The notes beneath the pieces are model-generated. The model did no database searches, was not told the DNA's origin, and saw only the letters and a list, made by a program, of their open reading frames with translations. A stretch of 64,000 bases of DNA from Adineta vaga (Eukaryota; Animalia; Rotifera), in NCBI GenBank assembly GCA_021613535.1, contig CP075496.1:3534001-3598000 (forward strand). Reading direction: 5' to 3'. Within the stretch, counting starts at the first letter, position 1, and each line of letters opens with the position of its first letter. A program made the position numbers and the translations under genes. Of the stretch, positions 28,401 to 48,741 are shown one piece after another.

Positions 28401-31400
28401 GTCGTGGTGGCAGTATTGAAGGATCAGGACATGGTGGACGTCGTGTATGTTGCTTTATTCTGAGATTTTATTTTCTATTCAATCAATGTTTTGTTTTTAT
28501 TTTCTAGTTAGATGAAGGTTTTGAAAGTGATGAAGAATATGAACGTCGTCGTTATGGAAGATCTAGTAAGTTTGAAAACTAGAACATGAAAGAAAGAGTT
28601 TTCTTTAGACTAATTCATACGGGTATTTCTATATATTTATTTTCTTTCGTAACAACTAAAGATTTTGTCGTTGATAATGGAAATCGTTCTCGAACAATAA
28701 TAAAAACTATCACATATGAAGAACCAACAGAAGAAGAATTAGGAGAACAAACAAACGAGAAAGTTTCTTCTCAACCGAATCAAATTTTACAATTTAAACA
28801 ATTAGAACCACTTAAAATGGTTAAAAGAGATATTTCGAGAGAACACATTCCTTCATCATCATCAACATCAAGTGCAGATACAATTATAAATGCACGAATT
28901 TTTGACAGAAAACTAGGTTCATAAAAATCGATATTGTCTTTGATGTTGTTTCGTAAAAACGAAAACTAATTTAACTATTGTCTATTGTTTTGTCAATGTT
29001 GTTTGTATGTATTTTTTCAAGGTGAACGTGATGCTCCTCTACATTTTGTTGATTCAAGTAAAGCACCAACGCCTGCATCACGTTATGGTGGTTATTATTC
29101 CATCTATCAACCATTTAGTAAATCAGGTTCAATGACACCATTGAGTTGTTATGCACATCCATTCGAATTAACTCATCTTGAAAGTTTAAGAGACAAATTA
29201 AATCGTTTAACACGTGATAAAGGTTCTTTTCGTTTGATGTGCTTTTTTTCTATTATTAAGCATGCAATATCGATCGATTTGCTGTGATTTTTTTATATTC
29301 AATTAATTATTAACACGATATATCTCATAACTTTATTTTTATCTTTAGCTGATCATGATGATTCGACAACAAAACGACGAAGTGCAGATATTGGTGAAGG
29401 ACGAATCACGCCATTAACAACGGGTAAGATTCTTTTCTCTATTCATATAACTATTCATATTAGAATCATTTACTTATCAGTATGTCTCAAGAGAAACAAA
29501 AAAATAAGAAGAAAGACGCTTTTTTTTCTTTCATTAACAAACATTCAATTATAAGAATAAAGGAAAGGAAACTGCGAGTTGTGCTATCTGAATTAATGAA
29601 TAATCAATCGAAGAAGAGAAGAAATAGTACACGAAAAAAAAAATACAAACAATTTTCTATTGATAGATAAAATCAAATAAAAGATAATAATCGTAATAAT
29701 ATTTTCTTTGATAAGGAAACTGCTAATAGATTATTTATAATATTAATTTGAGGGTGGAGTAAATCCTACTATGAACGATTCAAACGTAACTTTTTTTGTG
29801 AAGAAAATTCGAGATTCTGTTGCTTGAGAAAAAGAAAGAATCCGTTTCAATGAGTAGAAGTGTGTGAATGAAGAAGATTTATAATTCTTTCGGTTCAGCA
29901 ACTCTATTGAGTCTAAAAATAATTAATATCAGAGATTGTTTTTCTTGATTAATTTTACTATTATTTAATATTGCTAATTTCTCGGTTCTTTTCTTTTCTT
30001 TTCTTTCTAAAGATTATTACAAGAAAAAAGCATCCGTACCAAAACAAGATGATTTTAGTATTGTTCATATCGCTAAAGAAACAACACCAGGCGCAGTAGA
30101 TTATGATGTATTATCAAAACCGTATATTCCACCTATTATGGATACAATTGTTCAAGAAACTTACGTTTCTCCAGCTAAATTAGATGTAAATCAATTCAAT
30201 GAAGATTTATCACAAACACAACATATAACAACAGCAACTGAACAGTTAGCTGAACAAACAGCTCAACTACTTGATGATATTCGTAAGTACTGGCCTAACA
30301 TTTTTCTAAGTCTATTTATATTTTTTTTAAAACACTAATAATTTTTTTCCAGCACCTACACGTGCTGTTTCATCTCAGGCAGCACCTGCTGTAGGTGAAC
30401 GCTTAATAAAATCGAAAATAATACCCGATCAAGCACGTGCATTAGCACATGCATTAAAACATGCTGTTGTTAAACCGTTGAAAAAATCGATGATGACAAA
30501 AAAGAAATCTGTTGATATTAGTTCGTATGAACCTCAAATAACACAGCCAATATCGACTCGACCAACAAGTGTCAATGAAATTTCCGAACCATTGCTAAGT
30601 GAAACACCTATTGATTCAGTTGAATCAACTACTCCTCTTCCATTAACACCACCACCAGCTAAACCACCTCGTCATGGCGATGAGTCAGGTTCATCTTCAT
30701 CTACTGAGATTAGTTCACCACCTGCGAAACCACCGCGACATTTTCCATCATATAGTAGTAGTAGTAATAATTCTAATAATAATACTGATCCCACGCTCAT
30801 TCAACAAACTGATAATGTCGTTAAAAAAGTTCTAAATCTTGTCGATACATTTGGTATCATATCGGAAAATGATACTGATATGAATATTCTTCGACAAACA
30901 TCACCTCCACCAATCTATGTTCAACAACCGTCATATACTAGTGAGCTCGCTGATGAAAATCTCGCTATAAATCAAACTGCTGAAATATTTACTGTTGATC
31001 CAGCACGAGTAACTTTAAATACTGAAACACCATTGATATCAAAATCTCTTGATGAACCTTTAACTATCATCTCATCAGCGCCATTAAAATCTACTCCTAT
31101 TCCTACTGAACATTCATCTACTAACATGACTGAACCTATATCATTGGAACAGAATTCGACGCCGAATGAAATTACTCGATTAGCAACACTTTTAACTGAC
31201 AATATTTTTCAACAAGTTGAAAAAGAATTTGAAAAACATGATCTATCAACCAAAAATCTATATACGAATCAACAAGATTTACCCGTTACATATTCAATAC
31301 AAACATCATCAACAGATAATACATCTCGCGATATTTTACAAACATTACCTGATATTAAAACAACATCACGTCCTCTCGCACGCGTTTCAATTGACTCAGG

Positions 31401-34400
31401 ATCGAATACAACAAAAACAGCTTCGCCGTTACTTGATATTGTTACAACAAAAACAACTCCAAGAATAACAACATCAGTTACTGTTATTAGTCCACCACAA
31501 CCCGAAGTAACATCTACAACAACAAATATCAATTCCGATGAAGAAGATATATCAACAAGTACTTCAACATTAATGCCAAATAGTATCACCTCTGATCGTT
31601 CGAAAGCTTTACTAAGTAGTAGTAAAGAAAGTAGTGTTGATTCAAATGATACGAATCCATACGATACATCAATCCCACAACAATTAAATACAGGTAGTGC
31701 AACACCCGCACGTTCACTCCTATCTGATTATGACAATTTACATGGTTCATATGGAAGTCTAAATGATGATACTCAACATCCATTCCCTGCTGTACTTCCA
31801 GCATCCTTAACAACATCAGAAACAGCTACATCTATTGCACCAACGAATGCATCATCAATATCAACTATATACGAAACGGCAGATTCGTCACAAGCATCAT
31901 CCACGCCAACATATGTAACAGCTAAGAATAGCAATACTAATGTAACCTCAAGTAATTCAACATTATCGGCAACACGTATAAATTCAGATATAAGTGATGA
32001 AGATCTTGTTGAAACATATGACGTTGAAACACCAGTATTAGCATCAAACAATCCATTTGGATCATCTCAAGGTAGAATCACATCAGATTGTATTTCATGC
32101 AAATACACAAGCACGAAACGATTGAATTCTTTGTCCTGGCATGTCTTGAACACCTTCCTTTTTTTTGGATCGGCGCATGTATATTGAATTGTTCTCATAA
32201 TCATATTCTTTTCCTCTTTCTCTCTCGCTCTCTCGCTCTCTGTCTACATCTATGTTAATCATGGAAAAAGCACATTTCTTTGTACCGATATAATATACTA
32301 TCAAGGTTTTTCCCCAGGATAAATTAATGCAAAATTCATCCAGCTAATAGATGTAATGTATTAATTTTACATCTCGTTTTTAAGGCTATAAATGTAATCT
32401 TCATTATCAATGTTTCGGTACACAGCATGTTTAATAACAAAAAAGTGTGCGCATGAAGATGATTTGATATAAATTTTTATCGATTATAAGTACAACAATC
32501 AATATTTAATAATGTCTACTTTTTATTTAGATAATCTGGAGACCAGTATCGGTACTAGTGAACAACCAGCAACTACTTCAAATAAAGAAGGTAAGATATT
32601 AGCTAAATAGATTTGTTTTGAAATACCACTGATCCTGCTGCTACTACTACTACTACTCAGTAAACTAGTGCTCATAGTTAAAATCTGCATGTTATATTCT
32701 AAAACTTAATTGTCTAATTGACATAATTATTCTAGTTCAAAATTAATCGAGAAATCCATAATGTAAGCAATCAGATTTGAAAACAAAAACGCATGAATTT
32801 TGAGAATGAAAATTATGATTATAATATAGCATAACAAAACGCTAGCATGTAGCTATGAAAAATTTCTTTGGTCTTCTTTGTGAGAAACTAAATGCATGGA
32901 TTTGATTTTCTTCATTGATTTATTTCTGCATTTTCAATAAATATTGGATAATGAAAGACATGAATGTATGATGCGGTTTTGCATGGTTCGCTTAATCTCA
33001 TCTTTTTTCTTTATTCTTTCATAGTTCTCACTTCCATTCTTTGAGAATATATATTCAACAGTAGATTTTCTTCTCTTCTCTCATCGTTCAATCACATTCA
33101 AGTCGAACAACATCGATATATTTCAATTAATACTTCTTCTCCTACGAATTTTCAATTTATTCTATATGATGTTACGATAAGAGAAATTCTCTCATTGATC
33201 TCTTATTTCATAATGTCACAAACCGTATCATACATTTTTTGTCCATTGTCTATCAAATCTCATTTTTATTTCTAAAAATAGATGCAATTCTGCGTACATT
33301 GGGCAGATTTTTTTCTTCTATATTACAGCTTTTGTTCTCGTTCTTTTTCCAAGCAAATTCATCAAAGAGAATAAGCAGCAGAATCAAAAGGAATAAAGTC
33401 ACTATTAAGCTACTACATCTCTCGATTTTCCTTGTTTTCTCTTGTTTACAGCTATTCTTACCGGCAAAGGAGAAGAAGCGCCATCATCATCATCATCATC
33501 ATCAAAAGCATCGTCATTATTAATCTCTTCTCCTTCTACTATTGTTCCTTCTCTTTCTCCTACTTCTTCTTCATCTCATATGAACACTAAGATAGAGTCT
33601 AATCTTTCGTCATCAATATCAAACAAAACATCGACAATGCCGTTTCAACAATTAAATCAAACTCCATTTACAATATCAACTACAAATGAAGAGAAAATGA
33701 CACCAATCAGATCATCTAAAATTGATACGATTCCACAATCACCAATTCATCAACGACGCTTACCATTACCTACTAAATTAACATTTGAACAAAACATTAC
33801 TAATCTTCTCGAAAAAGAATCTCCATTATTACAATCAGAATTATTAACAGCCGAACATGAATTATCTGTATTACGTTCACGTTTAGCTGTTAATGAAGGT
33901 GTCACAGCTGTAACTGGTTCAATACTTGAATCACTTAAAGGACACTTTGAACCACATCATAAAGTTGATATTGCTACTTCACCACTTGATATTTATAAAC
34001 ATAGTTTATTTCATCAATCATTAGCTAGTCAAACATCACCAATGATCGAATCATTTCCTGAAATACCTGAATCCGTTGAAATACATTATGATGCTCAAGC
34101 ACCCAAAAATCCATATTTACTTGTTAAAACAAAAAATTCATTTTGGATTGCTCAACCAATTCCAATATCTGAAGCAGAAACACGTTTACAAAAATTTTCA
34201 TCACCTATTATGAAACGTGCAACAGTGAAATTACCAAAATCATTTGATCAAACATTTTTAACCGATAGTGAAACTGAAGAGGAACCTATTCCAGTAGAAG
34301 AACCAAACAAACGACAATCAGTTGTCGAAGAAAAACCATTGACGATAGCAAATGTTCAACGTTTAGCTGAAAAACAAATTCATAAATTGAAAGAAAGTGA

Positions 34401-37400
34401 AAATAGCTGGTCAATGGAAGTTTTACCACCATCAAACGTTGAAGAAGTACCTAGTCCAACGACTGAAAAACCTCTTCGTCAAGATTCATCCGTTACTTTC
34501 GAAGAAAATCTTTCTTCACCATCAATAAAATCAACGTCAAAATATGTGGATGAGAATGTTAAAACTCAAATCTCACCAGAAGATGAACGTTCACTTCCGG
34601 ATGTCAAAGAACATATATCCGAAATGAAAGCCATTCGTTCTTCATCTCTTCTTCAAACTGAAGATCAAATTGAACAATTCGATGATAAAATCGATGAATT
34701 ATATTCGATTATTGACTATTTGAAACATAACCAATTAACAGCAACAAATTTTAAAAATATTCACACAAAAATTGATGATTTAAAAACAATTATGTCTGAT
34801 ATTCAATTAAATAAAACTGATGAATTACGTATTGAATATGAATTAGATGAATTAGAAAATTTATTTCAAACAATGAATGACAATTTAATAAATAATATTC
34901 ATCAAGAAGATTATAGTTTAATTGAATTATTCGAACAAAATGTAAATGAATTACGTCGAATTATCAATGATATTAAATCAAATAAAATTGAAGAATCATT
35001 ATCAAATATTAAGGATCTTCCCGAACATGAATCAACACAATTAACAGAAAATGATTGGACACCAGAACAAATGGCTGAATATTTTCATCGTGGACCTGAT
35101 GGTCGATTATTATCACCACGGCAATCACATCTTATCCCTGAAGATCCAGTCATTACGCGTGAAGTCTTTTTTGAAGGTGATAAACAACATCGAGAAAAGA
35201 AACCTTCAATCACACATGTTACTCATCTAATTCCAGAAGAAGCTCGTATTAGTGCAGAAAGTTTTTATGAAGGTGATATTCATCGTTCATTGTATCACAA
35301 GGAAAAAGACAAAGATACTGTTATACATGAAAAACCACTCATACCTGAAAGTCCTCTTGTGTCAAGCGACGTATTCTACGAAGGTGATGCACAACGCTCG
35401 ATGTTCTCTGAACGTTCATCATTAATTCATACTGAACCAACAATAGCAACAACGTTATCATCATCATCGTCATCATCACCACCGCCACCACCCTCGATTG
35501 ATAATCTTAGAGAAATCATGAGTGATTTGATGTTGGCAGCTTCATGGTCGAAAAAACCAACAAAAATCGAAGAACAACCAACAGTCGACGATGAAGAAGT
35601 TGTAGCTGAATCATTCATTACTACTGAACAACATTATCCAACTGCATCCTTATGTGAAATTGTTCATGAAATTGAGAATTTTCCTCTCGCTTCATCAAAA
35701 CGTTTATCTCATCCAGCAATTCAAATTGATGAACGTGATACAATCTCACCATTTAGTTCTGAAACACCCATTATTATACATCGAACGATTTTAACTCGAC
35801 AAGAAACAGATCGATGGCCACAAGAAGAATCACAAATAATTGAAGAATCAACAGAAGAATTAGAAAAGATTGAACATGAAGTTCGATCACATGCTGATGA
35901 TTGGACGAATTCATCAAATCAAAGAAAAGAAGTCTATGGAGAACATTATCGACCTGAAAGAAAGTTTAGTCAAGAATCTCCAACTGAAGAAATTCAATCA
36001 AAATATGATACTGAACAATTCGAGGATCAAACAACAAGAAATATATTGCACGATACAGAAGAACGAGATGAAAATGAACAATCACATATCGAACGAACTT
36101 GGAGTACAGAAAAGATTCTCGAACCGTCATCAACAATTGAATCTGAACATGAATCACTCATTACTTCACCTTATGAAGTTCATGAAAAATTAATTTCAAA
36201 CGATGATATTATCACTACAGATAAAGATCAACAATCGGATAAATTTTATATTCAGTCACCGCAAACGATTGCATATGAACAATCTTCAACGCCAAAACAA
36301 TCCTTGATTGAAACTCAACAAGGAAGTCATGAAGAAGATTCAGATGCAGAAGATCATTTTAAACTTGAAACGCAATTTAGCGATGAAAAACTTATTATCG
36401 AATCTTCGCCATCTCGAGAAGAGGAAGATCGAGAATCTCATCAGATGAACAGACTAACTGAAGAAAAAGTCGAAGAAGACGAACAAATTCTTGAAGAAAT
36501 AACTGAAGGAGCAGATGCACACAAACTACAAACAAAACTAAACACTGAAAAGATCGATTATGAATCTCCTCAACTAAGTGAACATGAAGATGAAGCAGAT
36601 AAATTGGATCAATCAATAGAATCTAAGAAATCTCTTATTGAAGATGAACATGAATTTCAACCTACATCAAGTACTGAAAATATTAAGTTACAATCACATT
36701 ATGAAAGTGATCATGAAGAAGAAGCGAAAGAACTGTACGAATCGAAACGAAAACATATTACTGATGAAATCATTCGAGAGACTTCTCCAAATATCGAACA
36801 AAAACAATTTCAACATCCTGCATTAGTACAACAAAACGTTCAAGAAGAAACATCAGATGAAGAAATGCATCGTGAAACCGAATCCAACATTCAGACACAT
36901 GAAGCATCAAGTTATAAATCAGAGAAGCAATTTAGTCCCGTACAAACAGTAGCTAAATCTTCATTCATTTCCGACGAAGACGACCAATCTGAACCTTTTC
37001 TAAATGATAAAGAAACTGTGATTATACCTGGTGAAGTATCGGAACAAGAAACACGTGATAAAGTAGATGATTACAAACTTGAACAAAGAAGAAGCTCTGA
37101 AAGACCAAAAACTGAATCTCCTCAACCCCGTGAACACGACGATGAAACACATCAATTTCAATATACTACGAAGTCTAAACAAATTCTGTTTGATGAAAAA
37201 TCTGAAACTGAAGAAAAGCCAAGTTCTAGGAGTATTAGTAACATCTCGTCGCAGCATAGTGAACATGAGGACAAACAAGAAGACGATCATCATCTTGAAC
37301 GACAACGTAGCGTCGAAGAAACTGCTTTAGAATCATCTCAGAGTATTGAACGAACCTCACATGAAGACACACGACGATCCAGCATTGATGAAGCTCCAAT

Positions 37401-40400
37401 TACACCTCATGAAGAAGTACGTGAACTTAGCTTCGAAAAGCATAGAACTGAATCATTACAACACAGTGAAGATGAAGATGAACATCATCTTGAACGACAA
37501 CGTAGCGTCGAAGAAACTGCTTTAGAATCATCTCAGAGTATTGAACGAACCTCACATGAAGACACACGACGATCCAGCATTGATGAAGCTCCAATTACAT
37601 CTCATGAAGAAGTACGTGAACTTAGCTTCGAAAAGCATAGAACTGAATCATTACAACACAGTGAAGATGAAGATGAACATCATGTTGAACGACAACGTAG
37701 CGTGGAAGAAACTGTTTTAGAATCATCTCAGAGTATTGAACGAACCTCACATGAAGACACACGACGATCCAGCATTGAGAAGTTCCGATTACACCCTCAT
37801 GAAGAAGTACGCAAATCCAGCTTTGAAAAGCAGAGCACCGAATCTCTACAGCACAGTGAACATGAAGACGAACAAGAAGAAGATCATCATCTAGAACGAC
37901 AACATAGTTCTGAAGAACTATCAACTACATCTCAGAAAATGGTGGAAACTGAAGAATATGATTTAATGAGAAAAGGAATTTCTGAGGAGCTTCGTTCTGA
38001 CATTACTCAATTTAGTAAGCACACACAAGACGAAGATGTTAGTCCACACCAAGATGAAGTACTTGTTAGAGATCAGCAAAAATCACCTGAACACGAAGAA
38101 CATCAACTCGAACGACAACGTAGCATCTGAAACCAATGTTGAACAATCATCCCTTATCAAACATGAAGAAAAAGATGATGAACATAAACTGATAGGAACA
38201 GTTGGTTTCGAAAGATCTCGTTCTCTGTCTCCACAATTAAGTGAACACGAGGAAAAAGAAGAAGAAGGACATACAATTCATCATGGTGACCAGATTGTCG
38301 TTGAAGCTCAACATGAGTCAGACAAAGATGAAGACGAAAATAAAGATTATCATCTTGAACCACAACATAGCACTGAAGAACCAACTATTACACTTCACCA
38401 AGTGATAGAAACAGAAGAACATGATTTGACAACTACTCAATTTAGTGAACAAAGAGAAGGAGAAGAAGATGTTCCTCCCAACTATGCTGAAATTTCGGTC
38501 AGAGCTCAAGATCGGTCACGAGAAGATGAAAAAGACGATCATTACCTACAACAACAACATATCATCGATGAAACTAATGCTGAACCATTTTTCAATGTCA
38601 CACATGAAGAAGACAAAGATGATTATGAACTGATAGGAACAACTGGTGTCGAAAGATCTCGTTCTACATCTCCACGACCAAGTGAACATGAAGAAGAAGA
38701 GACTATTCATCATGGTGACCAGATTGTGGTTAAAACTCAACATGAGTCAGACAAAGATGAAGATGACAATGAAGATCGTCATCTTGAACGACAACATAGC
38801 ACCGAAGAAACTATTTTAGAATTATCTCAGAATATTGTACGTCCATCAAATGAAGACGAAAGACGATTCAGTACTGACGAAGTTCCAACTACACCTCATG
38901 AAGAAGTACGCATATCCAGCTTCGAAAAACACATCACTGCATCCTCACAACACAGTGAACATGAAAAGGAACAGGACGAAGGTCATCACCTTCAACAACA
39001 TCAACAACCCACCATCGATGAAACTAATGCTGAACCATTTTTCAACGTCACACATGAAGAAGACAAAGATGATTATGAACTGATAGGAACAACTGGTGTC
39101 GAAAGATCTCGTTCTGAATCTCCACGATCAAGTAAACATGAAGATGAAGAAGAAGAGACTATTCATCATGGTGACCAGATTGTGGTTAAAACTCAACATG
39201 AGTCAGACAAAGATGAAGATGACAATGAAGAACATCATCTTGAACGACAGAGTAGCTTCGAGGAAACAACTGCTCAATCTTCTCAAAATATTCCACATGA
39301 AGACGATAAGCAAGAAGAACAAATGCACATTGAAGAAACGTTGGCCACACGTCGAGAAGACGTAGAAGCTGAAGAAGAACCCCACACTGAATCACCTCAA
39401 TTCAGTGAACATGAAAGTGAAAATGAAGCAACACATCATTCTATTGAAAAAACAACCGAATCTCAATCTACAATTGATCAAACACAACATCGACGAAGCA
39501 CAGAAATAGGAGAGCTTCAATCTTTTCCAACAATCGAACAGGAAGAGTTTCGACAAGTAAGATTTCCCAGTGATAAAGAATCTGTGATCAGTCCACAAGA
39601 AGAAAATCTACCACAAAAAGATGAATATAAATTAGACAAAAGATTCAGTGTTGAACATATTGATGTGGAATCGCCTCAATTTAATGAACATGAAGATGAA
39701 CAAGATCAATTAGAAAAATCATTCAGTCCAAAACAAACATTTACTGAAGAAAAACATGTACTCGAACAACCATCAAACTTTGAAACTGTCCATACCGAAC
39801 CACATCAATTGAGTGAAGATGAAAGACAAACAAAACTAGCAGATAATGATCATGATGAATATAAATATGAAACTACAACAGAATCTTCGCGTACAATTGA
39901 ACCAAATCAATATGATTTTCGAGAACAATTGACTAACAATGAAATTCGTGCTGAATCACCATCAACACTTACAGATGAAGAAGATCAAACTGAGCACAAA
40001 TTAAGTACCGAAAAATCTCATCATGAAAGTGAACATGAACAAGAAGAAGAAGAAGAAGAAGAGCAGTATAGACCTGAAAGAAAATCTAGTTTGGATCAAG
40101 TAAGTCTTCAATCATCACCAAAAGTCGAACAACAGAAAGATTTTTATGAACGATATCCAAGTACTCATAGTACTACAGACGAAAAGTCTGAAAACGAAGG
40201 TGATATTCATTTGGAACGAAAATTAAGTTCTGGAAAAATTAGTACCAAGTCTCCTCGTGTAAGTGAACGCGATCAAGATGAAGTAGAAGATCAATATCAG
40301 CAACAGTTTAGTGCAGATGAATCGTCATTGAACAGTTCACAAAAAATTGTCGAAGAACAGATAGTTGCTCCTGATGACGATGATGATGTTATCATGGAAA

Positions 40401-43400
40401 TATCGCATGATAGCCGTCAAAATCAATATAAAAATGAAGAAATCATTCAAACTGCTGCATTGATCCGAGTAGATTCACAAAAATCTGAAGATGAACATGA
40501 ACAAGAAGCTCCACGAAAATTCAGCGAAGGTCAAGTTATCATGAAATTGATTCCAGCATCGGACACGGAAGATGAAAGCCAATTGAGTACTGAACAGGTT
40601 TCCACTGAAACTTATCCAGTAACTCAAGAATATGAAAATCAACAACATACAGCACATCATGATAAAACTTCGGTTGAAACACCTCATATGATCGAAGACG
40701 ATATCACTGATCAAAAAGATAACAAAACAAGTAATGTTAAATTTATTGTTGCATCTGCTCCATCATCATTCGAAGAGGACCGAGATTCACAAGAATTTAA
40801 CACCGAATCATCTTCTAAACTAACTGAAGAAACAGAAGAAAAACATCAACAACAACAACAACATCGAGCAGATAGTTCTGAACAGACACATTTCGACCAA
40901 CCAGGTACATCACAACGTAAATCTACCAGTGAATCATCCGATGATCATGATGATAATGAAGATAAACCTGACAATAAAGTAGCAGTACATGAAACTGAAC
41001 AATCACAGAAGTTTTCTACTGTACACAGTCAATCAGATGAAGACGAGCAATATCCATCTGATCGTAAACAAAGTACTGAAGAAGTCATCGTGAAATCTTC
41101 TCCAGTAAGTGAAACTATTCAACATGAACAATCACCTATAAGTCAACAATCATCTGTCATCTCTCATGATGAAATTGAAGAACATGAATCTAGAACTGAA
41201 AATGATTATAAACCTTCACATAATTTGACCTTGGAAAATATCGACAGAAAATCTCCTTTAACAGCTGAACATGAAGAAGATCAATATCCAGATGAATTTA
41301 TTATTGAACAAACTCACGAAACTGATGAAGATGAAGAAGATCAACATCACAAACGATTCGCAACATCTGATCAACAAAGTGAAGAAATCAAAGACGAACA
41401 AAAATCGATTGCAGATCAATCATTTACTCATTCATCACATGAAAGTGAACATGAAGAGGATGATAAACATCGAGGAGAAATTATTAGTACATCTCATTTA
41501 TCAGACGAAGACGAACATTACCAACCTGAACATAAACACAGTTCAGATCATATTGTACCAGAAATATCTCCTACAATTGAATCAAAACACTTTGAATCAT
41601 CGACAGCGTTTCAACGATTACCATCTACATCTCATGAAGAATCAGATCAACTTATTGTTGAACAAACAGAAATAATAGCAAAAGATGAAAAAGATCAATA
41701 TGAACATCCAGTTGAACATGAACCTGTACGACGATTAAGTGATGATAAAACAACTACAAAATCAGATATCGAAAGTGAACCTGAAGAAGAACCAAAACAT
41801 TATGATGAAATTGATCGAAAATCCGATACCGAAAAAATGACTACTCAAACATCACAGTTAAGTGACAAAGAAGACAATGAACAACAAGAACAAGATATTC
41901 TTGCTCATTCACAAGAAATTGAAGAACAAAAAGAAACAACCGATCATAGCATTACCGAATCTCTGGACCATACACAAGAAAGTACTGATTTTCAAAGATT
42001 AGTAAGTGCAGGACACGTTGCTCTGTCTTTTCCTCGACAACTTGCTGAAAATCAAGACGAACGTCGTTCAAGCATTGAAGAAAAATCTACTATTCCATTC
42101 CTGACGAAAATGAATCAGAAGAACATAATCTGGCTGAAACTCATTCTCCTAAAAATTTCGAACGAGAAATTAGTGATGATAATTTTGTCAATCTACAATC
42201 AGCATCCTTTAATCAAGACGAAGATGATCAAGTAAAACGGCCAGAACCATGGACAGAATCACCATTTCAACGTGAAGAAATCTATGGTGACAAATATCGA
42301 CCAGCTAAATATACTCATGAATCACCAGATACAGAACCTCAATCTTCAATAATCTCACATATACAACATTCAAGTATTATATCTCGTACAATTCCGTCAT
42401 ATCAAGATGAAGAAGAATTAGAGCATGAAGAATTTCGTCCGACACATCTTGATATTTCAATTGGTGACGAAAATGAAAAGAACTTATGCACAACGTCAAC
42501 ACCTGAAACTGAACATATTCTTTCAGAATCTAATCAAGACAATCAATATGAAAAAGTTCTTGAACAAACATCGAATGAGTTTGTTAATCGAATTCTAGAC
42601 GAAGCTATTAATGAAACTATTGAACAAGATAAAAATTATACTATATATCAAACAGCAACCGGTATTGTCAATAATGTATTCGATAATGTCTATACAAAAT
42701 TTGATGATGAAGTACTTTCTTCACAACGTGACGAAGCAACTAGTGCCGATGTATCTATTAGTGATTTAACTGATTGGTCATCTTTAGTAAAGAATGTTCC
42801 AGATGTTATAACAGAAGAAACATCAACTAGAATTACAAGTAGTGAAAGTGATCGAATTGAAGTAAAAGAGCAAGAACATTCAACATCCGATGACGAAGAA
42901 AATGAAAAATTAGTTAAAAATATTACTGACGAACTATACTTATCTGTTGCAGATGCTGAAACAACCAAATCTACAAATGAACTCGCCGATCTCGTTCAAG
43001 ATTTACATCGATTTGAACAAGAAATCAATGATAATATCGATATTATTCGTTCTTCCTCACCTTCAGAATCATCGTCAATGTCGGATAATGATGAAATTCA
43101 TCATTATGATATAACTGTTCCATCGATACCCGAACCGCAATCTACCGAAGAAAAACTTCACTTACCAATCTCATCTAAATCTTCGAATGAAACTGATGAT
43201 CATGTTAGTGATTTGAAAGATACTAATGTAGAAAAACTCGAATCAACAAATATCGATTCACTATCACGTGATATTCTTCAATATCGTCGTGATTCACAAT
43301 CCAATCAATCAGAAAATCATTCACATGAAATAGAACGTCGACCATCAAGTCCACCCACATCACCACTACTCAAAGAACAATTTGTTCAAGTTACATGTTC

Positions 43401-46400
43401 ATCCATGAATGATGTTGATCAAGTACGAGAACAATTAGTAAATGAAATAGACGATCCTTCCGGTTTACAAGAAATGATCAGTGCAGCTATTCAACAAGCA
43501 CAACAAAATATTCATTCAGATGTAAGTTCAAGAAAAAGAAAGATATTTTCAAGTTTCTTTTTCATCGTTTTAGCATTTGGATATTCCTCGTCCAAGAACA
43601 AAATCAATTCCAACGATTGTTGCTGATCAACGTCATCCACCTCATATTCACTCATCAGCAACGAGTATATCAGATGAATTAGACCTTTCTCATGAAGATA
43701 GTACCGGTGATCGATCAAGTGAATTAGCTGCTCAACTTGATTATCTTCGACGAATGTCACGTTACGAACACTTAATGGACGAACAACAACGTGAAGCAAC
43801 CAATTTAGAAAATAATCAAATACATGATATAGATCCTGCATTTCATACAACATTCAGTGATGAAGATGCGGAGTTATTGGCAAGTAATTATTTAAAGAGT
43901 GTTCGTGAAGAACAACCAACATCTGATGAACATGAAGACGAGGACGACAACGAAAAAGATGAAGATAAGAAGAAAACAAAACGTCCATCGTCGACTGATG
44001 ATCACAATAAATCATTATCGAAACATCATGATTCCGATGACGATGATGATCATGATCATGATCATAAAGGTAACAAACCATTAATATCATCAACCATTCA
44101 AGAAACAACTTCATCTGAATCATATCAACAACCGACTTCGAATGAGTCAAATCAAAAACAAACCTATCAATCTTCACAGCAACAAATGGACATGAGTACT
44201 GATTCAATCAATGAATCAATGGCCATTAGTCAAGATTCTCTTAAACGACATTCATCTGATTCTCTCGATTCCGAACAAGAATTGAAACTTCTTTCATCTG
44301 CAACTCCTCTTCTACCTTCTAATGACACAGATGATTTCATTATGAGACAACATCAAAGTGAACCAACACCAAGTCAAATGATGAAAAAATATGATGACGA
44401 TAGTTTAAATGATCTCAAATCAACAAATATTCAATATCCATTAATATCCAATGAAATCGATATTGGACAACTGCCTGTTATTCATGCACGACGTACAGCA
44501 AGTGAAAATAGTCTTTTCAGTTCATCATCATCATCATTACATATGTATGATGGGCATTCATTATCAGCATCATGTTTAGCTGATAAAGATGATTTAACAC
44601 CCTCGAATGAATATATTGATTATCAACAACAAATTCTATATGATGATACACACAAAAATCAACAAATTTATCGTGAAACAACTCGAAAAGATGTTGATGA
44701 TGATAATAATGATTTCAATCAAAGTTCATCTCCATCCACGAGTGGAGGTGGCTTTTTTGATCGTGTCAAAGCATTTGTTAGTAAACCAGTTGAAATTGTA
44801 CAAGAAGTTATGGAAAATCGTCGTAAACAACGATCAACATCGTCGTTAAATAGTAATCCAGATTTTAATGAAAAACAACTTATGGACAATGAAAATGACT
44901 CATTAACATCTTCATTACAACAACATTTTCATTCTGCTTATGAATTACATGATGATGAACAAAGTAAACTTGTTCGTAGTCCCGAATTATATGAAATGGA
45001 TCATGTTAACAATCCGAATCAAACAGATTTATTACCACATTTACATATTCAAAATCGTACACAATCAGAAACACTACTGAAAACTGATGATTCGAAGCGT
45101 AATAGTCTAGTAACAGGTAGTAATGAAATATTTGAAGAATTCCTACCAACACTTTCAAAAGAGAATTCATTGGAATTTATGCAACAACAGCAACGACTTT
45201 CAACACCATATGATGATGTGGTGGAAAAAGAATCCAGTCCTGAACATTCGGAATCTTTTAATTTACCGACAACAGCATTTTTAGATACATTTGAACCGAC
45301 AAGTAGTTGTCAAAGACCATTAGCACTCAGCGTACCTAGCCAACCACAAAAAGCAGATGAACCAATGACAGAAGAAGAATTCGATGTACTTACATCAGAT
45401 TACGTCAATCAAGTATTAACCGATGTTGTAGCTCAAATGACTGGAGACCATGATGATTCTTCTCACAGTAACAAAAGCGATAATCTATCAGCGAATAATA
45501 CTTCATCTGATAACGATGACGATGAACTTCATGAAGACGATGAACACGAACAAAAACAAAATCAAATTCCAACAGATACAAGTTCATTTGGTTTTAATGA
45601 TCGATATAGTGCTGATGAATCTTCAAATACTCGTGATCAATCTGCTGATGAAGATCATTCAGCTCGATCATCAAGAACAACAACACCAACAAAAAGTTTC
45701 CAACATTCATATACAGATATTGAAATTCTCAATACCGAAAACGCTTCAAATAGATTAGCATCACCACCACAACCACCACCTCCGCCGCCAGTTATTGTCC
45801 GTCATGGTTCTCAATCTGATACGGGAACATATTTTAGTGCAATATCACCATCAAGTGGCGGTGAATATGTCGATGCTCATGGTAAAAGTTCAACAGTTGA
45901 TGAAGATAAAATACATCTTCAACCACCTACACAATCCAATTCTAGTCAATATTTAACTGCTGATGATGAAACACCAAATTTCTTGACATCAGATGATAAT
46001 GAATATGCGGATGAAAGTGGAACAATTAATCCTGGTTATGATGATTCTAGTTCCGATGAAAAACATTCGAATGAAACTCGTTCACAAATTTCTACAACAA
46101 CGAATGAAAAATTATCGCAAGATAAGTACTCTGGTGAAGGTGAAGAAAGTAGTGGTGGAAATCTAGAAACAACTCAACGGCGAAAACGTTCTAATGAACA
46201 ACGAATATCTTTACCAATTGACACAATAAGTAATAATTCGGAAAATGTTACATCGAAAAGTGTTTCATTTAAATTAGAAGCTAATGATAATTCACCACGT
46301 TCACCTCGTCTATCACCAGGGAGTAGTGGATTTGTAGGAGGAAGTTATTTTCGAGAGGAAAGTGTTGACTCACCGATTGACGATTCGAATGAAAAACAGT

Positions 46401-48741
46401 TAATCAAAAGTATTCAAGAAGATATTCTTCGAACTAATCTTGCAACATTAAAAACTGATCTAGAATTAATTGAAAATGAAAATGAAAATGAACAACAAAC
46501 GTATCGATTAACATCAACTCCACTACCAACTACATCAACATCAACAACAAAGAAATCTTCATCTTATTCCGATTATGATGCTGGTGATGAAAGTGATCGT
46601 GATTCTTCATTAATGGATTCAATTAAATCAAGTATTCAAATACAATTAGATGATATTTATCAAGAAAAAGAATCTTTAATCGATAGAATTAAACTTAAAT
46701 TTGAACGTTCATTAGATCGTCTAGTAGAAAAAACGTTAGCTGGCGATGATGATACTAATAAATCTGACATTATTTCACCATTCACTGATCAAAGTCTTAA
46801 TCGTTCCTTACCAACAAGTGAACCAGTAACAACAACAACAACTGGTCTTATTCATGCACATAGCGAACAACATTTACAAGCTTGTCCAGATGAACTTGAT
46901 TATGGAACATTACAACGTTTTAGTTCAGATAGTTGTATAATTATTCGTGTACCTGAACAATATACACCATCATCAACATTATTTTTTGATCAATTAAGAA
47001 ATGAACAACTTGAACAAAAACCTTCCGCTGTTAATAAACAACCATCAGCATTTAGTTTTTACACAAAACAACAAGAACAACAACAGCAACAGCAGCAACA
47101 TCCTCAACCTTCAAGTAGTCCAATTGAAATGTTAACAACCAAAACTGAATTAATTGAAAATATTTCGCCTATTAATCGTTATACACCACGTTCATTAGAT
47201 GATTCATCTTTAGAATTTGGTGAACGTGATACAGGCGAAATGTCCGATGAATTTGTTCTTGTGAAAAATATTTCTCCGTCAACAAATTCGAAAGAAATCA
47301 AACATGATACACCATCACATTCATCCTCAAGTTCATCTGATAAACATGAAAGTCCAGATTTAATTGATATTCTTCAACATCAATGTGAATATCCACCACT
47401 TGATACTGGCTTCGATTTACGTTCAGGTACAACATTAGAAACTGTTTATGAAAGTCCAGAATTACGACAAGATGAAATTAAACCTGCTCTAAGTACGTTA
47501 AGTTTAACAACAAGTGATATTCTTCGTCCATTTTCAGCTGATCATAATTCATCGAATACACCAAATACAGATGATTCATTATTGGAATTTGAACGTATTG
47601 AAATGGAATTATTGAAAAATACTTCAACAACAAATATTATTGATACAGCACGTGAAATACGTTCATCAGTTGATTCATTAATACAACAACATGAGAACAA
47701 TAATGATAAAGTTGAATCATTTATTGAAAAACATTTTCCATCTATTGATAATGATGTTCAAAATGTTCTCAGTGATATTCTTGATATGGCAGGTGATTTA
47801 ACAAATTCTATTTCATCTCAATCTGATGCAACAACTGTCATTGAAAAATCTCAACGTCATTCAATTGATGATGATTTCGTCGAGATAACACATGATGATC
47901 TACAAAATCAAGAACATAATTTATTTTCATCTGATGACGATATTCGTCAGCATCAAATGAATCCATCTAGTCATGACAAACGTCGTTTATCGGCACCTAC
48001 ACATGATCCAACAACAAGACGTATTAAAACTCCTTCATCAAGTTCATCATCTTCTTCATCATTTTCTTCGACATCCCGTTCTGTGATATATTCTCAACAA
48101 AATTCAGCATCAGGCTATTCTCAACATCGTGTATTACAAGCTGAAACTGATCTTGTTAGTTTTAGACAACAAACTCAAACACAATCGGCAACAGATTTAC
48201 CATTTTTACCACCATTTGTAAATACTAATCCGATTCGAACAAAACATCAATCAACAGCATCAGTTTCATCAACTCCATCTCTTACTCATACAGAATTATC
48301 GACCGGTCATTCGAAGAAAAAAACTCATTCACATCCCGGTTCGTTAGGAGGTCATCAACAATCTCCTCGATCAACATTATCCAAAGAAGGAATCTCTTCT
48401 TCACCTTTGACATCTATGTCTTCACATTCTTCATCATCTTCTCATCATTCCGACGATTGCTATTGTGCAGATCCCTCAACTAGTCAGCAACATTAGATTA
48501 TTTTACTTGGTAAAAATCAATGGAATAAATCTCCTTCTCTCTGTCTCTTAGTCATACTTCTTCTTTATTATCGCAATTAATCATCCTTCTTCGCGCCTTT
48601 AAATTATCACTAATGCATGGTTTTCTTAGCTTGCTTGTTGTGGTTAACCATACTCATATCTAACCATCACCAACATCACATATACTTAGGCAAATGAATA
48701 TCATCTCTCTTTTGTTTATTTCAGGTGAACATCATCGTTGA
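16476..48741 (+). CDS. ANK2: Ankyrin (ANK2/UNC-44-like) locus: ankyrin repeats, ZU5-ZU5-UPA, death domain, alternatively spliced tail with giant exons
   Basis: [13 protein letters not shown] (from 20344), repeated TPLH motifs to ~24570, [21 protein letters not shown] (ZU5), [22 protein letters not shown] (UPA), death domain 27942-28445; first exon choice uncertain; symbol denotes family, not strict orthology. Confidence 0.93.
30353..32071 (+). CDS. Ankyrin large S/T/P-rich cassette exon (1.7 kb)
   Basis: CAG acceptor and GT donor, phase 1-1, open frame matching ORF 30478..32187. Confidence 0.8.
32139..32985 (+). promoter_or_regulatory. Intronic (T)GCATG cluster, putative Rbfox splicing elements
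   Basis: Nine GCATG at 32139, 32175, 32425, 32451, 32687, 32791, 32845, 32894, 32981. Confidence 0.7.
33451..43521 (+). CDS. Ankyrin giant exon (~10.07 kb, ~3,360 aa, acidic E/S/T/H-rich) with two apparent frameshifts
   Basis: TTTACAG acceptor at 33450 in phase with upstream exon; ORFs 33442..38130, 38036..42235 and an open frame from ~42097 to 43521 share composition; GTAAGT donor at 43522. Confidence 0.85.
37288..37872 (+). repeat. Coding tandem repeat, 3 x 195 nt (65 aa)
   Basis: ACTG(C/T)TTTAGAATC recurs at 37321, 37516, 37711; unit [32 protein letters not shown]... Confidence 0.95.
38125..39250 (+). repeat. Coding higher-order repeat, ~450 nt period
   Basis: ATCGATGAAACTAATGCTGAACC at 38564 and 39014; diverged copy from ~38125. 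Confidence 0.9.
43574..48496 (+). CDS. Ankyrin terminal giant exon (4.9 kb, ~1,640 aa)
   Basis: 52-nt phase-0 intron 43522-43573 joins it in frame to the giant exon; ORF 43577..48496. Confidence 0.88.
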   Translation, partial: HLDIPRPRTKSIPTIVADQRHPPHIHSSATSISDELDLSHEDSTGDRSSELAAQLDYLRRMSRYEHLMDEQQREATNLENNQIHDIDPAFHTTFSDEDAELLASNYLKSVREEQPTSDEHEDEDDNEKDEDKKKTKRPSSTDDHNKSLSKHHDSDDDDDHDHDHKGNKPLISSTIQETTSSESYQQPTSNESNQKQTYQSSQQQMDMSTDSINESMAISQDSLKRHSSDSLDSEQELKLLSSATPLLPSNDTDDFIMRQHQSEPTPSQMMKKYDDDSLNDLKSTNIQYPLISNEIDIGQLPVIHARRTASENSLFSSSSSSLHMYDGHSLSASCLADKDDLTPSNEYIDYQQQILYDDTHKNQQIYRETTRKDVDDDNNDFNQSSSPSTSGGGFFDRVKAFVSKPVEIVQEVMENRRKQRSTSSLNSNPDFNEKQLMDNENDSLTSSLQQHFHSAYELHDDEQSKLVRSPELYEMDHVNNPNQTDLLPHLHIQNRTQSETLLKTDDSKRNSLVTGSNEIFEEFLPTLSKENSLEFMQQQQRLSTPYDDVVEKESSPEHSESFNLPTTAFLDTFEPTSSCQRPLALSVPSQPQKADEPMTEEEFDVLTSDYVNQVLTDVVAQMTGDHDDSSHSNKSDNLSANNTSSDNDDDELHEDDEHEQKQNQIPTDTSSFGFNDRYSADESSNTRDQSADEDHSARSSRTTTPTKSFQHSYTDIEILNTENASNRLASPPQPPPPPPVIVRHGSQSDTGTYFSAISPSSGGEYVDAHGKSSTVDEDKIHLQPPTQSNSSQYLTADDETPNFLTSDDNEYADESGTINPGYDDSSSDEKHSNETRSQISTTTNEKLSQDKYSGEGEESSGGNLETTQRRKRSNEQRISLPIDTISNNSENVTSKSVSFKLEANDNSPRSPRLSPGSSGFVGGSYFREESVDSPIDDSNEKQLIKSIQEDILRTNLATLKTDLELIENENENEQQTYRLTSTPLPTTSTSTTKKSSSYSDYDAGDESDRDSSLMDSIKSSIQIQLDDIYQEKESLIDRIKLKFERSLDRLVEKTLAGDDDTNKSDIISPFTDQSLNRSLPTSEPVTTTTTGLIHAHSEQHLQACPDELDYGTLQRFSSDSCIIIRVPEQYTPSSTLFFDQLRNEQLEQKPSAVNKQPSAFSFYTKQQEQQQQQQQHPQPSSSPIEMLTTKTELIENISPINRYTPRSLDDSSLEFGERDTGEMSDEFVLVKNISPSTNSKEIKHDTPSHSSSSSSDKHESPDLIDILQHQCEYPPLDTGFDLRSGTTLETVYESPELRQDEIKPALSTLSLTTSDILRPFSADHNSSNTPNTDDSLLEFERIEMELLKNTSTTNIIDTAREIRSSVDSLIQQHENNNDKVESFIEKHFPSIDNDVQNVLSDILDMAGDLTNSISSQSDATTVIEKSQRHSIDDDFVEITHDDLQNQEHNLFSSDDDIRQHQMNPSSHDKRRLSAPTHDPTTRRIKTPSSSSSSSSSFSSTSRSVIYSQQNSASGYSQHRVLQAETDLVSFRQQTQTQSATDLPFLPPFVNTNPIRTKHQSTASVSSTPSLTHTELSTGHSKKKTHSHPGSLGGHQQSPRSTLSKEGISSSPLTSMSSHSSSSSHHSDDCYCADPSTSQQH
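48725..48741 (+). CDS. Ankyrin short-isoform terminal exon (..GEHHR*)
   Basis: Pyrimidine tract plus TTTCAG acceptor; in frame with the phase-1 donors (e.g. 32590). Confidence 0.6.

What the first reader, a model, noticed from the sequence alone, without database searches (positions are those of the whole stretch)
33451..48496. Giant ankyrin (~7,000-7,500 aa) with giant exons placed after the death domain
Seen: two huge exons (10.07 and 4.92 kb) splice in phase downstream of the death domain, while introns between UPA and the death domain (27706-27941) are tiny. Known: vertebrate giant AnkB/AnkG insert the giant exon between UPA and the death domain, whereas nematode UNC-44L extends after it. 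Inference: a spiralian giant ankyrin of the nematode-like layout, relevant to whether giant ankyrins arose once or several times. Automated annotation would probably split it into several unknown ORFs.
Basis: partly seen in the sequence, partly recalled or inferred. Interest (0 to 1): 0.85.

Follow-up and report, generated by a model that had tools for sequence, protein, structure and literature searches.

The report
Giant ankyrin gene of a rotifer
This is the giant, probably nerve-cell, version of the ankyrin gene of the bdelloid rotifer Adineta vaga: two very long exons follow the death domain, which is the layout already known as typical for invertebrates, so it is a solid but expected find.

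Summary
Largely confirmed, but ordinary. The window (Adineta vaga, chromosome-scale contig C4) holds a canonical ankyrin gene: ANK repeats, ZU5-ZU5-UPA and a death domain. About 15 kb of long open frames follow on the same strand.

RNA contigs from three studies splice the death-domain exons through seven GT..AG introns to a 60-nt microexon (32531-32590). From there transcripts go one of two ways:
- to 32736, giving V-Q-N-stop and a short isoform of about 2,440 aa;
- to 33452, the first long exon.

Gene models in Rotaria, Didymodactylos and the A. vaga ohnolog on C1 already fuse Ank+ZU5+UPA+Death with the homologous tail.

- The exons start at 33452 and 27942, one base later than stated.
- The "10.07 kb exon" is not one open frame in this assembly. 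It is broken by a 2-nt gap at 38126 and a 1-nt gap at about 42095-42099. In A. ricciae the same exon is one open frame of 3,235 codons. I could not tell whether the breaks are assembly errors or real.
- The 43521|43574 junction is conserved but was not tested with RNA.

Long exons after the death domain are already published as the general protostome and echinoderm layout (Jegla 2016, PMC5135030). This is therefore a new member (phylum Rotifera) of a known kind. I sent no joined spliced protein to any search tool.

The parts
17364..17474 (+). Putative first coding exon of the ankyrin gene (MSDLTSTKN...HHHHHQ, followed by GT)
   Evidence: Inferred from position and similarity to residues 1-36 of the annotated C1 ohnolog P0050. 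No RNA evidence was collected here.
20344..24600 (+). Exons encoding the ANK-repeat membrane-binding domain
   Evidence: Pfam Ank, Ank_2 and related families hit every open piece, E down to 6e-52. Collinear with P0050. I did not count the repeats.
25647..26842 (+). Exons encoding ZU5-ZU5
   Evidence: PF00791 at E 6e-19 (25647-25889) and 4e-13 (26042-26842).
27133..27705 (+). UPA exon
   Evidence: PF17809 UPA_2 at E 1e-40. The exon ends ...PPYDK|GT at 27705.
27768..27887 (+). Two small exons between UPA and the death domain (27768-27779, 12 nt; 27833-27887, 55 nt)
   Evidence: Both are flanked by AG/GT and are homologous to 'ENEERLRALHSVERDRNSES' of P0050. Inferred; not covered by the laid reads.
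27942..28444 (+). Death domain, two exons (27942-28145 and 28278-28444)
   Evidence: PF00531 Death at E 2e-7, 31.4 bits against a cut-off of 22.6. The 132-nt intron 28146-28277 is seen as a GT..AG joint in three RNA runs and not in the DNA run.
28508..32071 (+). Post-DD exons shared by both isoforms: 28508-28565, 29022-29222, 29349-29423, 30013-30282, 30353-32071
   Evidence: All junctions are GT..AG joints in RNA runs X11, X7 and X8 and are absent from DNA run X1. The spliced frame has no stop. The donor at 32071 lies inside the 618-codon open frame, 113 nt before its stop at 32185. The large exon is S/T/P-rich.
32531..32590 (+). 60-nt microexon whose donor is the short/giant isoform switch point
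   Evidence: The joint 32071|32531 is present in all three RNA runs. From the microexon there is a joint 32590|32736 (X11, X7) or continuation into 33452 (X8 record 23).
32736..32760 (+). Start of the alternative terminal exon of the short isoform (adds V-Q-N-stop); its 3' end was not determined
   Evidence: GT..AG joint 32590|32736 in RNA runs X11 and X7; translation.
33452..43521 (+). Long exon 1 (10,070 nt). It is acidic and mostly disordered, and in this assembly has frame breaks at 38126 and at about 42095-42099
   Evidence: - The acceptor is TTGTTTACAG|CT, and no ATG lies between the preceding in-frame stop (33406-08) and the acceptor.
- An RNA contig joins the microexon to it.
- RNA runs hold 58-72% of its sampled words, against 63-76% for DNA runs.
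- RNA depth is zero over 32850-33449 and resumes at 33450.
- It is homologous to a single 972-codon frame in the C1 ohnolog and a single 3,235-codon frame in A. ricciae.
34639..35004 (+). Conserved four-helix bundle inside long exon 1. Three LIPE..F[FY]EGD motifs follow it about 100 residues further on (roughly 35,100-35,400).
   Evidence: Alignment A1 of 20 bdelloid sequences has many invariant columns. AlphaFold pLDDT is 66-88 only for model residues about 363-478. Structural matches are to generic helical bundles only.
37279..39416 (+). Tandem acidic repeats (195 nt x 3.1 at 37279-37874; 450 nt x 1.9 at 38548-39416) flanking the first frame break
   Evidence: Tandem Repeats Finder; paralog alignment across the break.
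38125..38130 (+). Frame break 1: 2 nt missing relative to the exon's own paralogous repeat copies, which creates TGA at 38128
   Evidence: The annotated protein P0016 ends here.
42095..42099 (+). Frame break 2: 1 nt missing relative to A. ricciae
   Evidence: Residue 2819 of P0041 maps to 42094 in frame 2 and residue 2822 to 42100 in frame 1. The blastn alignment shows a 1-nt gap.
43522..43573 (+). 52-nt phase-0 intron between the two long exons
   Evidence: GTAAGT..TTTTAG. A 57-nt intron sits at the homologous place in A. ricciae. Not tested with RNA here.
43574..48496 (+). Long exon 2 (1,640 codons plus TAG), the conserved C-terminus of the giant isoform
   Evidence: The frame is unbroken. 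Identity is 77% to A. ricciae, 70% to A. steineri and 66% to Rotaria sp. Silwood1, and the steineri and Rotaria proteins end at the same residue. AATAAA lies at 48524.

Best explanation
The window carries one ankyrin gene of Adineta vaga, about 31 kb long (17364-48496, + strand). It makes at least two classes of product by a choice of 3' exons.

All transcripts share these parts:
- the ANK repeats;
- ZU5-ZU5-UPA;
- the death domain;
- about 850 residues of post-DD sequence, ending in a 60-nt microexon.

From the microexon donor (32590) there are two routes:
- Splicing to 32736 adds V-Q-N-stop and gives a conventional ankyrin of about 2,440 aa.
- Splicing to 33452 appends two very long exons (10.07 kb and 4.92 kb). 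These encode an acidic, serine-rich and mostly unstructured tail of about 5,000 aa, for a total near 7,400 aa.

By analogy with Drosophila Ank2-L/XL, C. elegans UNC-44L and vertebrate 480/440-kDa ankyrins, I infer the giant form to be neuronal. In that reading the membrane- and spectrin-binding core anchors it to the axonal membrane skeleton, and the long tail reaches into the axoplasm to organise microtubules and other partners.

Shown here: the domain content, the splice chain, the two fates of the microexon, transcription of the long exon, and conservation across Bdelloidea. Inferred: neuronal expression, the function of the tail, and control of the switch by the strand-specific GCATG cluster in the intron before the long exon.

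The two frame breaks in long exon 1 are either consensus errors of the assembly or genuine lesions, possibly on one haplotype. I put this at roughly even odds.
For: - Domains: Ank, ZU5, UPA_2 and Death are all found by Pfam.
- Splice chain: the joints 28145|28278, 28444|28508, 28565|29022, 29222|29349, 29423|30013, 30282|30353, 32071|32531 and 32590|32736 are all GT..AG. They occur in RNA runs from three studies and are absent from the DNA run.
- Link to the long exon: X8 contig 23 runs 31252-32069, then 123 nt, then 33516-34049 and on. The 123 nt equal 2 + 60 (microexon) + 64 (33452-33515) minus one CAT unit.
- Link to the core: X8 contig 21 runs from more than 1.9 kb upstream of 28050 through the DD exons to 31246, and X7 contig 18 covers 30353-32069 whole.
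- Reading frame: it is continuous from the DD exon to ...NKE|AILTGKGEE.
- Not DNA contamination: RNA depth is 0 over 32850-33449, where the DNA run has 220-309, and resumes at 33450.
- Transcription of the long exon: RNA runs hold 58-72% of the words of 33451-43450.
- Ohnolog: the C1 copy has the same layout and is annotated as one 4,287-aa protein (I4U23_002824) that uses the homologous microexon-to-'ATLAGKGEE' junction.
- Other genera: fused models place Death before the tail homology (P0049: Death 1447-1520, tail from 2472; P0052: Death 605-678, exon 1 at 2269-4196, exon 2 at 4229-5880).
- Selection: dN/dS between ohnologs is 0.44-0.56 in the tail and 0.15-0.23 in the core.
- Chance: open frames of up to 1,640 codons compare with 217 at most in shuffles.
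Against: - Contigs, not single reads, carry the link, and no single contig spans from the ANK repeats to the long exon.
- The 32590|33452 joint was not listed in the joints table, because the adjacent CAT repeat was masked. I reconstructed it from the arithmetic of one contig in one run (X8).
- In X11 and X7 the microexon joins 32736 instead.
- Long exon 1 has two frame breaks in this assembly. If they are real, the protein ends at 38127 (about 3,990 aa).
- The 43521|43574 junction and the 3' end were not tested with RNA.
- There is no evidence here on tissue or function.
Confidence: 0.9

Rival explanations
1. The frame breaks are real. In the sequenced clone, or on the haplotype chosen for the assembly, long exon 1 carries a 2-nt and a 1-nt deletion. 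The giant isoform of this copy then stops at 38127 (about 3,990 aa), and the remaining 10 kb is a very recently disabled coding sequence carried as 3' UTR.
For: - The 2-nt gap is not in a homopolymer (ATC--TGAAAC).
- The public annotation of this assembly has a protein ending at that stop (P0016).
- Natural indels are frequent at this locus: five in the non-coding parts of 6 kb between the DNA-run contigs and the assembly, plus in-frame indels in RNA contigs.
- An asexual genome with a second ohnolog could tolerate such a loss.
- Two indels and no new stop codon in about 3,400 codons fits a very recent loss of constraint (my estimate).
Against: - About 3,435 codons downstream of the first break stay open in the expected frames.
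- A. ricciae (both copies), A. steineri, Rotaria and Didymodactylos keep continuous frames.
- Exon 2 is the best-conserved part of the tail.
- The first break lies next to tandem repeats, where polishing of long-read assemblies is weakest.
- P0016 comes from the same assembly, so it is not independent.
Confidence: 0.4
2. The long open frames are one or more separate genes downstream of ankyrin, with their own promoter, and merely lie next to it.
For: - Annotators called them separately in this genome, in A. ricciae and in R. sordida.
- No Pfam domain ties them to ankyrin.
- There is a 1.3-kb gap between the stop at 32185 and 33452.
Against: - 33452 is preceded by a strong acceptor, with no ATG between the preceding in-frame stop (33406-08) and the acceptor; the first Met is about 45 codons into the exon.
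- An RNA contig joins the microexon to it in frame.
- RNA depth is zero in the 600 nt upstream.
- Five independent gene models in other bdelloids and the C1 ohnolog fuse core and tail.
Confidence: 0.03
3. The two frame switches are bridged biologically, by very short introns or by programmed frameshifting, so the exon is really three exons.
For: A GTAAGC...TTGTTAG candidate of 55 nt (38015-38069) would shift frame 1 to frame 2.
Against: - Frame 1 downstream of that candidate still reads the repeat motif [10 protein letters not shown] up to 38127, and the repeat unit continues in frame 2 right after it.
- No GT..AG pair of workable length and phase exists at the second site.
- A. ricciae has no intron at either place.
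Confidence: 0.03

Closest known systems
Drosophila melanogaster Ank2-L / Ank2-XL (giant neuronal ankyrin)
   Same: - The canonical ankyrin core is followed, after the death domain, by two tandem long exons that are alternatively included.
- The tail is long, repeat-rich and low in complexity (PMC5135030).
- The same gene also makes a short isoform.
   Different: - There is no detectable sequence similarity between the tails: the search against representative proteins found only bdelloid proteins.
- The repeat units differ: 195-nt and 450-nt acidic units here, against 93 conserved repeats in the fly XL exon.
- Function and neuronal expression were not tested here.
Caenorhabditis elegans UNC-44 long isoform
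   Same: The long exon lies downstream of the death domain, and one locus gives both short and giant forms.
   Different: There are two long exons here rather than one, the tails share no similarity, and the phyla differ.
Vertebrate 480-kDa ankyrin-G and 440-kDa ankyrin-B
   Same: A giant isoform of a canonical ankyrin is made by alternative inclusion of a single very long exon encoding an extended, largely unstructured region.
   Different: In vertebrates the long exon sits between UPA and the death domain. Here that interval is 236 nt, holds two small exons, and has no long open frame.
Mollusc, annelid, brachiopod, arthropod and echinoderm giant ankyrins (Jegla et al. 2016; public models such as Lingula anatina 7,021 aa and tick ankyrins of 7,266-7,423 aa)
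   Same: - The long exon lies after the DD.
- 8 of 23 loci have two tandem long exons.
- Long exons average 8.1 +/- 4.9 kb.
- Total protein sizes of 5,000-7,400 aa are common.
   Different: Rotifers (Gnathifera) were not sampled in that study ('rotifer' occurs 0 times). Here a whole-genome-duplicate pair shows a fivefold difference in the length of exon 1 (3,357 against 972 codons).
Adineta vaga I4U23_002824 (C1 ohnolog, 4,287 aa) and bdelloid orthologs (Rotaria, Didymodactylos, A. ricciae, A. steineri)
   Same: They are true homologues, collinear from the ANK repeats to the C-terminus, with the same microexon-to-long-exon junction and the same intron between the long exons.
   Different: - The C1 tail is only about 1,810 aa and lacks the acidic repeat expansion.
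- The window's copy is not annotated as one gene.
- The window's copy has two frame breaks that the relatives lack.

Membership tests
Canonical ankyrin (ANK1-3 / Ank2 / UNC-44 family) | N-terminal array of ANK repeats (24 in the family) | tested here: met
   Pfam Ank and Ank_2 hits lie on every open piece from 20.7 to 24.5 kb. The repeat number was not counted.
Canonical ankyrin (ANK1-3 / Ank2 / UNC-44 family) | ZU5-ZU5-UPA spectrin-binding supermodule | tested here: met
   PF00791 hits two exons (E 6e-19 and 4e-13) and PF17809 hits at E 1e-40.
Canonical ankyrin (ANK1-3 / Ank2 / UNC-44 family) | Death domain after UPA | tested here: met
   PF00531 at E 2e-7, 31.4 bits, above the cut-off of 22.6.
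Giant ankyrin isoform (bilaterian long-exon ankyrins, Jegla 2016) | Unusually long exon or exons inside the ankyrin locus, between UPA and the next gene | tested here: met
   10,070-nt and 4,920-nt exons. The longest open frames are 1,573-1,640 codons, against 217 at most in shuffles.
Giant ankyrin isoform (bilaterian long-exon ankyrins, Jegla 2016) | Long exon spliced to the ankyrin core in transcripts | tested here: met
   A chain of RNA contigs runs from the DD exons to 33452, in frame. The last joint rests on one contig of one run.
Giant ankyrin isoform (bilaterian long-exon ankyrins, Jegla 2016) | Alternative inclusion: a short isoform comes from the same gene | tested here: met
   32590|32736 (V-Q-N-stop) in runs X11 and X7, against 32590|33452 in X8. 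Bdelloid short-isoform models of 2,394-2,504 aa exist.
Giant ankyrin isoform (bilaterian long-exon ankyrins, Jegla 2016) | One continuous reading frame through the long exon | tested here: inconclusive
   There are two frame breaks in this assembly, while the frame is continuous in A. ricciae. No more reads could be laid, so no reads could be laid on these sites.
Giant ankyrin isoform (bilaterian long-exon ankyrins, Jegla 2016) | Neuronal expression and axonal localisation | not testable with these tools
   The runs are of whole animals, and contigs give no tissue information.
Protostome/echinoderm-type layout (long exon after the DD) | Long exon downstream of the death domain | tested here: met
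   The DD lies at 27942-28444 and the long exon starts at 33452, about 850 codons later in the mRNA.
Chordate-type layout (long exon between UPA and the DD) | Long exon between UPA and the death domain | tested here: not met
   The 236-nt interval 27706-27941 holds only a 12-nt and a 55-nt exon.

The most novel reading that the evidence does not exclude
The two frame-breaking deletions in long exon 1 are genuine. In that case this asexual rotifer is caught in the act of truncating the longest of its ankyrin tails, on one haplotype or both, while the ohnolog on C1 keeps a much shorter tail. That would be a live example of giant-exon loss, the step that Jegla et al. infer happened repeatedly in bilaterian history.
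Probability: 0.35. Interest if true: 0.4.

Novelty: new member of a known kind. Interest (0 to 1): 0.3.

Why it matters
It gives a transcript-supported gene structure for a giant ankyrin in Rotifera, a phylum in the Gnathifera, which by my own knowledge is an early branch of Spiralia. The published survey of giant ankyrins did not sample this phylum. The long exons sit after the death domain, as that survey's single-origin model predicts, so the find adds support rather than surprise.

Practical value:
- The A. vaga annotation of this locus should be merged into one gene.
- The exact short/giant switch point (the microexon donor at 32590, going to 32736 or to 33452) is now known.
- The two ohnologs, with tails of about 5,000 and about 1,800 aa, offer a natural comparison of tail length.

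No long-standing question becomes newly testable.

Tried and rejected
- Pfam on the four long open frames found no family.
- Pfam on the tail-only homologues P0015, P0008, P0002, P0013 and P0039 found none either.
- A short query just after frame break 1 (38129-38800) against the 5.8-billion protein set, meant to find read-derived ORFs crossing the break, gave no hit.
- The look-up of encoding contigs for P0016 found nothing on record. P0016 lies on a 15.2-Mb NCBI contig, which I take to be this same assembly, so it is not independent evidence for the frame break.
- The ESM Atlas feature search on the conserved start of the long exon gave no usable hit.
- A profile search of alignment A1 against PDB sequences gave no hit.
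- The AlphaFold model of the conserved 751 aa has mean pLDDT 48.6, and only a four-helix bundle is confident. Its structural matches (Z up to 16) are to designed and generic helical bundles, which shows no function.
- Searching the genome for Fox-1_C (PF12414), to look for an Rbfox gene, found nothing here or in any control genome, so it is uninformative.
- I rejected a 55-nt intron at 38015-38069 as the explanation for frame switch 1, because frame 1 still reads the repeat motif after it.
- A literature search for ankyrin + rotifer + giant found nothing relevant.
- I joined exons only inside a script, to check the frame.
Full report
**What is in the sequence**

- The window is G000:C4:3534001-3598000 of a 100.8-Mb genome in six contigs.
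- A homologue on contig C1 (18,146,847 bp) is the NCBI protein "hypothetical protein I4U23_002824 [Adineta vaga]". The organism is therefore the bdelloid rotifer Adineta vaga.
- On the + strand lies a canonical ankyrin gene:
  - ANK-repeat exons at 20.3-24.6 kb;
  - two ZU5 exons (25647-25889, 26042-26842);
  - a UPA exon (27133-27705);
  - a death domain (PF00531, E 2e-7, above the cut-off) starting at 27942.
- Between UPA and the death domain there are only 236 nt, holding a 12-nt and a 55-nt exon. The chordate position for a long exon is therefore empty.

**The long open frames**

- Downstream, on the same strand, stop-to-stop open frames of 618, 1,573, 1,421, 515 and 1,640 codons follow.
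- In 200 shuffles of 33452-48493 the longest frame was 217 codons.
- The encoded sequence is acidic (pI 4.3-4.8; D+E 18-27%), serine/threonine-rich and without Pfam matches.
- It contains tandem 195-nt and 450-nt repeats.

**Is it part of the ankyrin transcript?**

I used the single read-laying run on 28050-34049, the stretch that links the death domain to the first long exon.

- Three runs from three studies (X11, X7, X8) show GT..AG joints that the DNA run X1 lacks, so they are RNA.
- The joints are 28145|28278, 28444|28508, 28565|29022 (with an alternative 28565|29349), 29222|29349, 29423|30013, 30282|30353 and 32071|32531.
- The donor at 32071 lies inside the 618-codon frame, before its stop.
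- The next exon is a 60-nt microexon (32531-32590).
- From the microexon, X11 and X7 join 32736, which adds V-Q-N-stop.
- In X8, a 1,888-nt contig runs 31252-32069, then 123 nt, then 33516-34049 and on. The 123 nt equal 2 + 60 + 64 (33452-33515) minus one unit of the CAT repeat that the tool masked. The microexon is therefore joined to 33452.
- Another X8 contig runs from more than 1.9 kb upstream of 28050 through all the DD and post-DD exons to 31246.
- An X7 contig covers 30353-32069 whole.
- RNA depth is zero over 32850-33449, where the DNA run has more than 220, and resumes at 33450. Coverage of the long exon is therefore not DNA contamination.
- The same RNA runs hold 58-72% of the sampled words of 33451-43450, against 63-76% for DNA runs.
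- In a script, the spliced frame is open from the DD exon to ...NKE|AILTGKGEE. I sent no joined sequence to any search tool.

**Comparative evidence**

- The genome has an ohnologous copy on C1 with the same order of parts. It is annotated as one 4,287-aa protein that uses the homologous microexon and acceptor.
- An exhaustive HMMER search with the first 800 aa of the long exon found only 33 proteins. All those whose source I looked up come from bdelloid genera: Adineta, Rotaria and Didymodactylos.
- Several are fused models with Death before the tail:
  - Rotaria sp. Silwood2 P0049: Death at 1447-1520, tail homology from 2472.
  - D. carnosus P0052 (6,899 aa, partial): Death at 605-678, exon 1 homology at 2269-4196, exon 2 at 4229-5880.
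- In R. sordida the Ank gene and the tail gene are called separately, 1.2 kb apart on one strand.
- dN/dS between the A. vaga ohnologs is 0.15-0.23 in the core and 0.44-0.56 in the alignable tail.
- Exon 2 is the best-conserved tail part: 77% identity to A. ricciae and 66% to Rotaria. The A. steineri and Rotaria proteins share its C-terminus.

- The 10,070-nt exon (33452-43521) is not one frame in this assembly.
- At 38126 the sequence reads ATC--TGAAAC where the exon's own two paralogous repeat copies read ATCGATGAAAC. Frame 1 ends in TGA at 38128 and the repeat unit continues in frame 2.
- At about 42095-42099 one letter is missing relative to A. ricciae. Residues 2819 and 2822 of P0041 map to 42094 (frame 2) and 42100 (frame 1).
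- In A. ricciae (contig CAJNOR010003890.1) the homologous exon is one open frame of 3,235 codons. A 57-nt intron at the homologous place and another open frame of 1,418 codons follow it.
- The start and the end of the window's exon are both homologous to the single 972-codon frame of the C1 ohnolog.
- Whether the two breaks are consensus errors (they lie next to repeats, and in-frame indel variants are common in the RNA contigs) or true lesions cannot be decided here. The only protein ending at the first break (P0016) comes from the same assembly.
- About 3,400 codons downstream remain open, so any loss of constraint would be very recent.

**How it most likely works**

- Shown: one gene gives two classes of product, and the choice is made at the donor of the microexon.
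- Inferred from established knowledge of Ank2-L/XL, UNC-44L and the 480/440-kDa ankyrins:
  - the giant form is neuronal;
  - the ANK repeats bind membrane proteins;
  - ZU5-UPA binds spectrin;
  - the about 5,000-aa acidic tail extends from the membrane skeleton to organise axonal microtubules and partners.
- The interval between the donor at 32071 and the acceptor at 33452 carries 9 GCATG on the sense strand. Shuffles give 0.47, and 0 of 2,000 shuffles reached 9. The antisense strand has one. The ohnolog's interval has 7 and none. This fits control by an Rbfox-type splicing factor, but I did not test that.
- The start of the long exon holds the only strongly conserved tail module:
  - an invariant helix ([27 protein letters not shown]);
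  - a confident four-helix bundle (34639-35004);
  - three LIPE..F[FY]EGD motifs.
  The structural matches are generic bundles.

**Comparison with what is known**

- Jegla et al. 2016 (PMC5135030) found long exons in 23 of 36 bilaterian ankyrins.
- They report the after-DD position "quite broadly throughout protostomes" and in echinoderms.
- 8 of 23 loci had two tandem long exons, and exon length averaged 8.1 +/- 4.9 kb.
- They found no sequence homology between phyla.
- Public models of 5,000-7,400 aa exist for ticks, horseshoe crab, crustaceans and the brachiopod Lingula.
- The rotifer gene fits all of this. Rotifers were not sampled in that paper, and I found no paper on a rotifer giant ankyrin.

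**Verdict**

- The interpretation as a giant ankyrin of the after-DD type is supported by RNA and by comparative data.
- The evolutionary significance is modest, because this is the expected layout.
- It is a new member of a known kind; interest about 0.3.

Noticed in passing
window 32139-32981 (+): There are nine GCATG motifs on the sense strand in the 1.38 kb between donor 32071 and acceptor 33452, against 0.47 expected from shuffles (0 of 2,000 reach 9), and only one on the antisense strand. The homologous interval of the C1 ohnolog has seven and none. This looks like an Rbfox-type splicing-enhancer cluster at the short/giant switch. The scan already noted it as s1-482831.
   Followed up: partly
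window 33337-33451 (+): The last ~115 nt of the intron before the long exon align with the C1 ohnolog at about 72% identity, as part of one alignment that runs on into the exon. Other introns of the gene mostly do not align. This suggests conserved splicing control elements.
   Followed up: partly
window 28565-29349 (+): An alternative joint 28565|29349 in RNA run X7 skips the 201-nt exon 29022-29222 in frame.
   Followed up: no
window 33468-33535 (+): RNA contigs carry in-frame length variants at the start of the long exon: one CAT unit fewer in X8 and a 6-nt insertion (CTACTC) after 33529 in X7.
   Followed up: no
G000:C1:8802100-8823300 (-), loci L011-L015: The ohnologous ankyrin gene has long exon 1 of only 972 codons, against 3,357 here. 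The window's copy and the A. ricciae orthologues gained several kilobases of acidic repeats. The two duplicates thus differ about threefold in tail length.
   Followed up: partly
window 3511-5278 (+): Open frames here have BCAS3 WD40-repeat similarity (PF21034, E 5e-18). This is an upstream neighbour gene.
   Followed up: no
window 49589-50844 (-): Two open frames of 249 and 160 codons lie on the opposite strand just after the ankyrin 3' end. They are probably the convergent neighbour gene. In R. sordida the gene after the tail is a CCDC17-like gene on the opposite strand.
   Followed up: no
window 32129-32312 (+): A low-depth RNA contig (X11, depth 2.8) runs through the region just downstream of the 32071 donor (32129-32312). 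This suggests some intron retention, or a third 3' end that would use the stop at 32185.
   Followed up: no
runs X18-X20: Three runs labelled as other organisms (B, C, D) hold 6-8% of the long exon's 31-letter words. They may be related Adineta species or contamination. I did not lay them.
   Followed up: no
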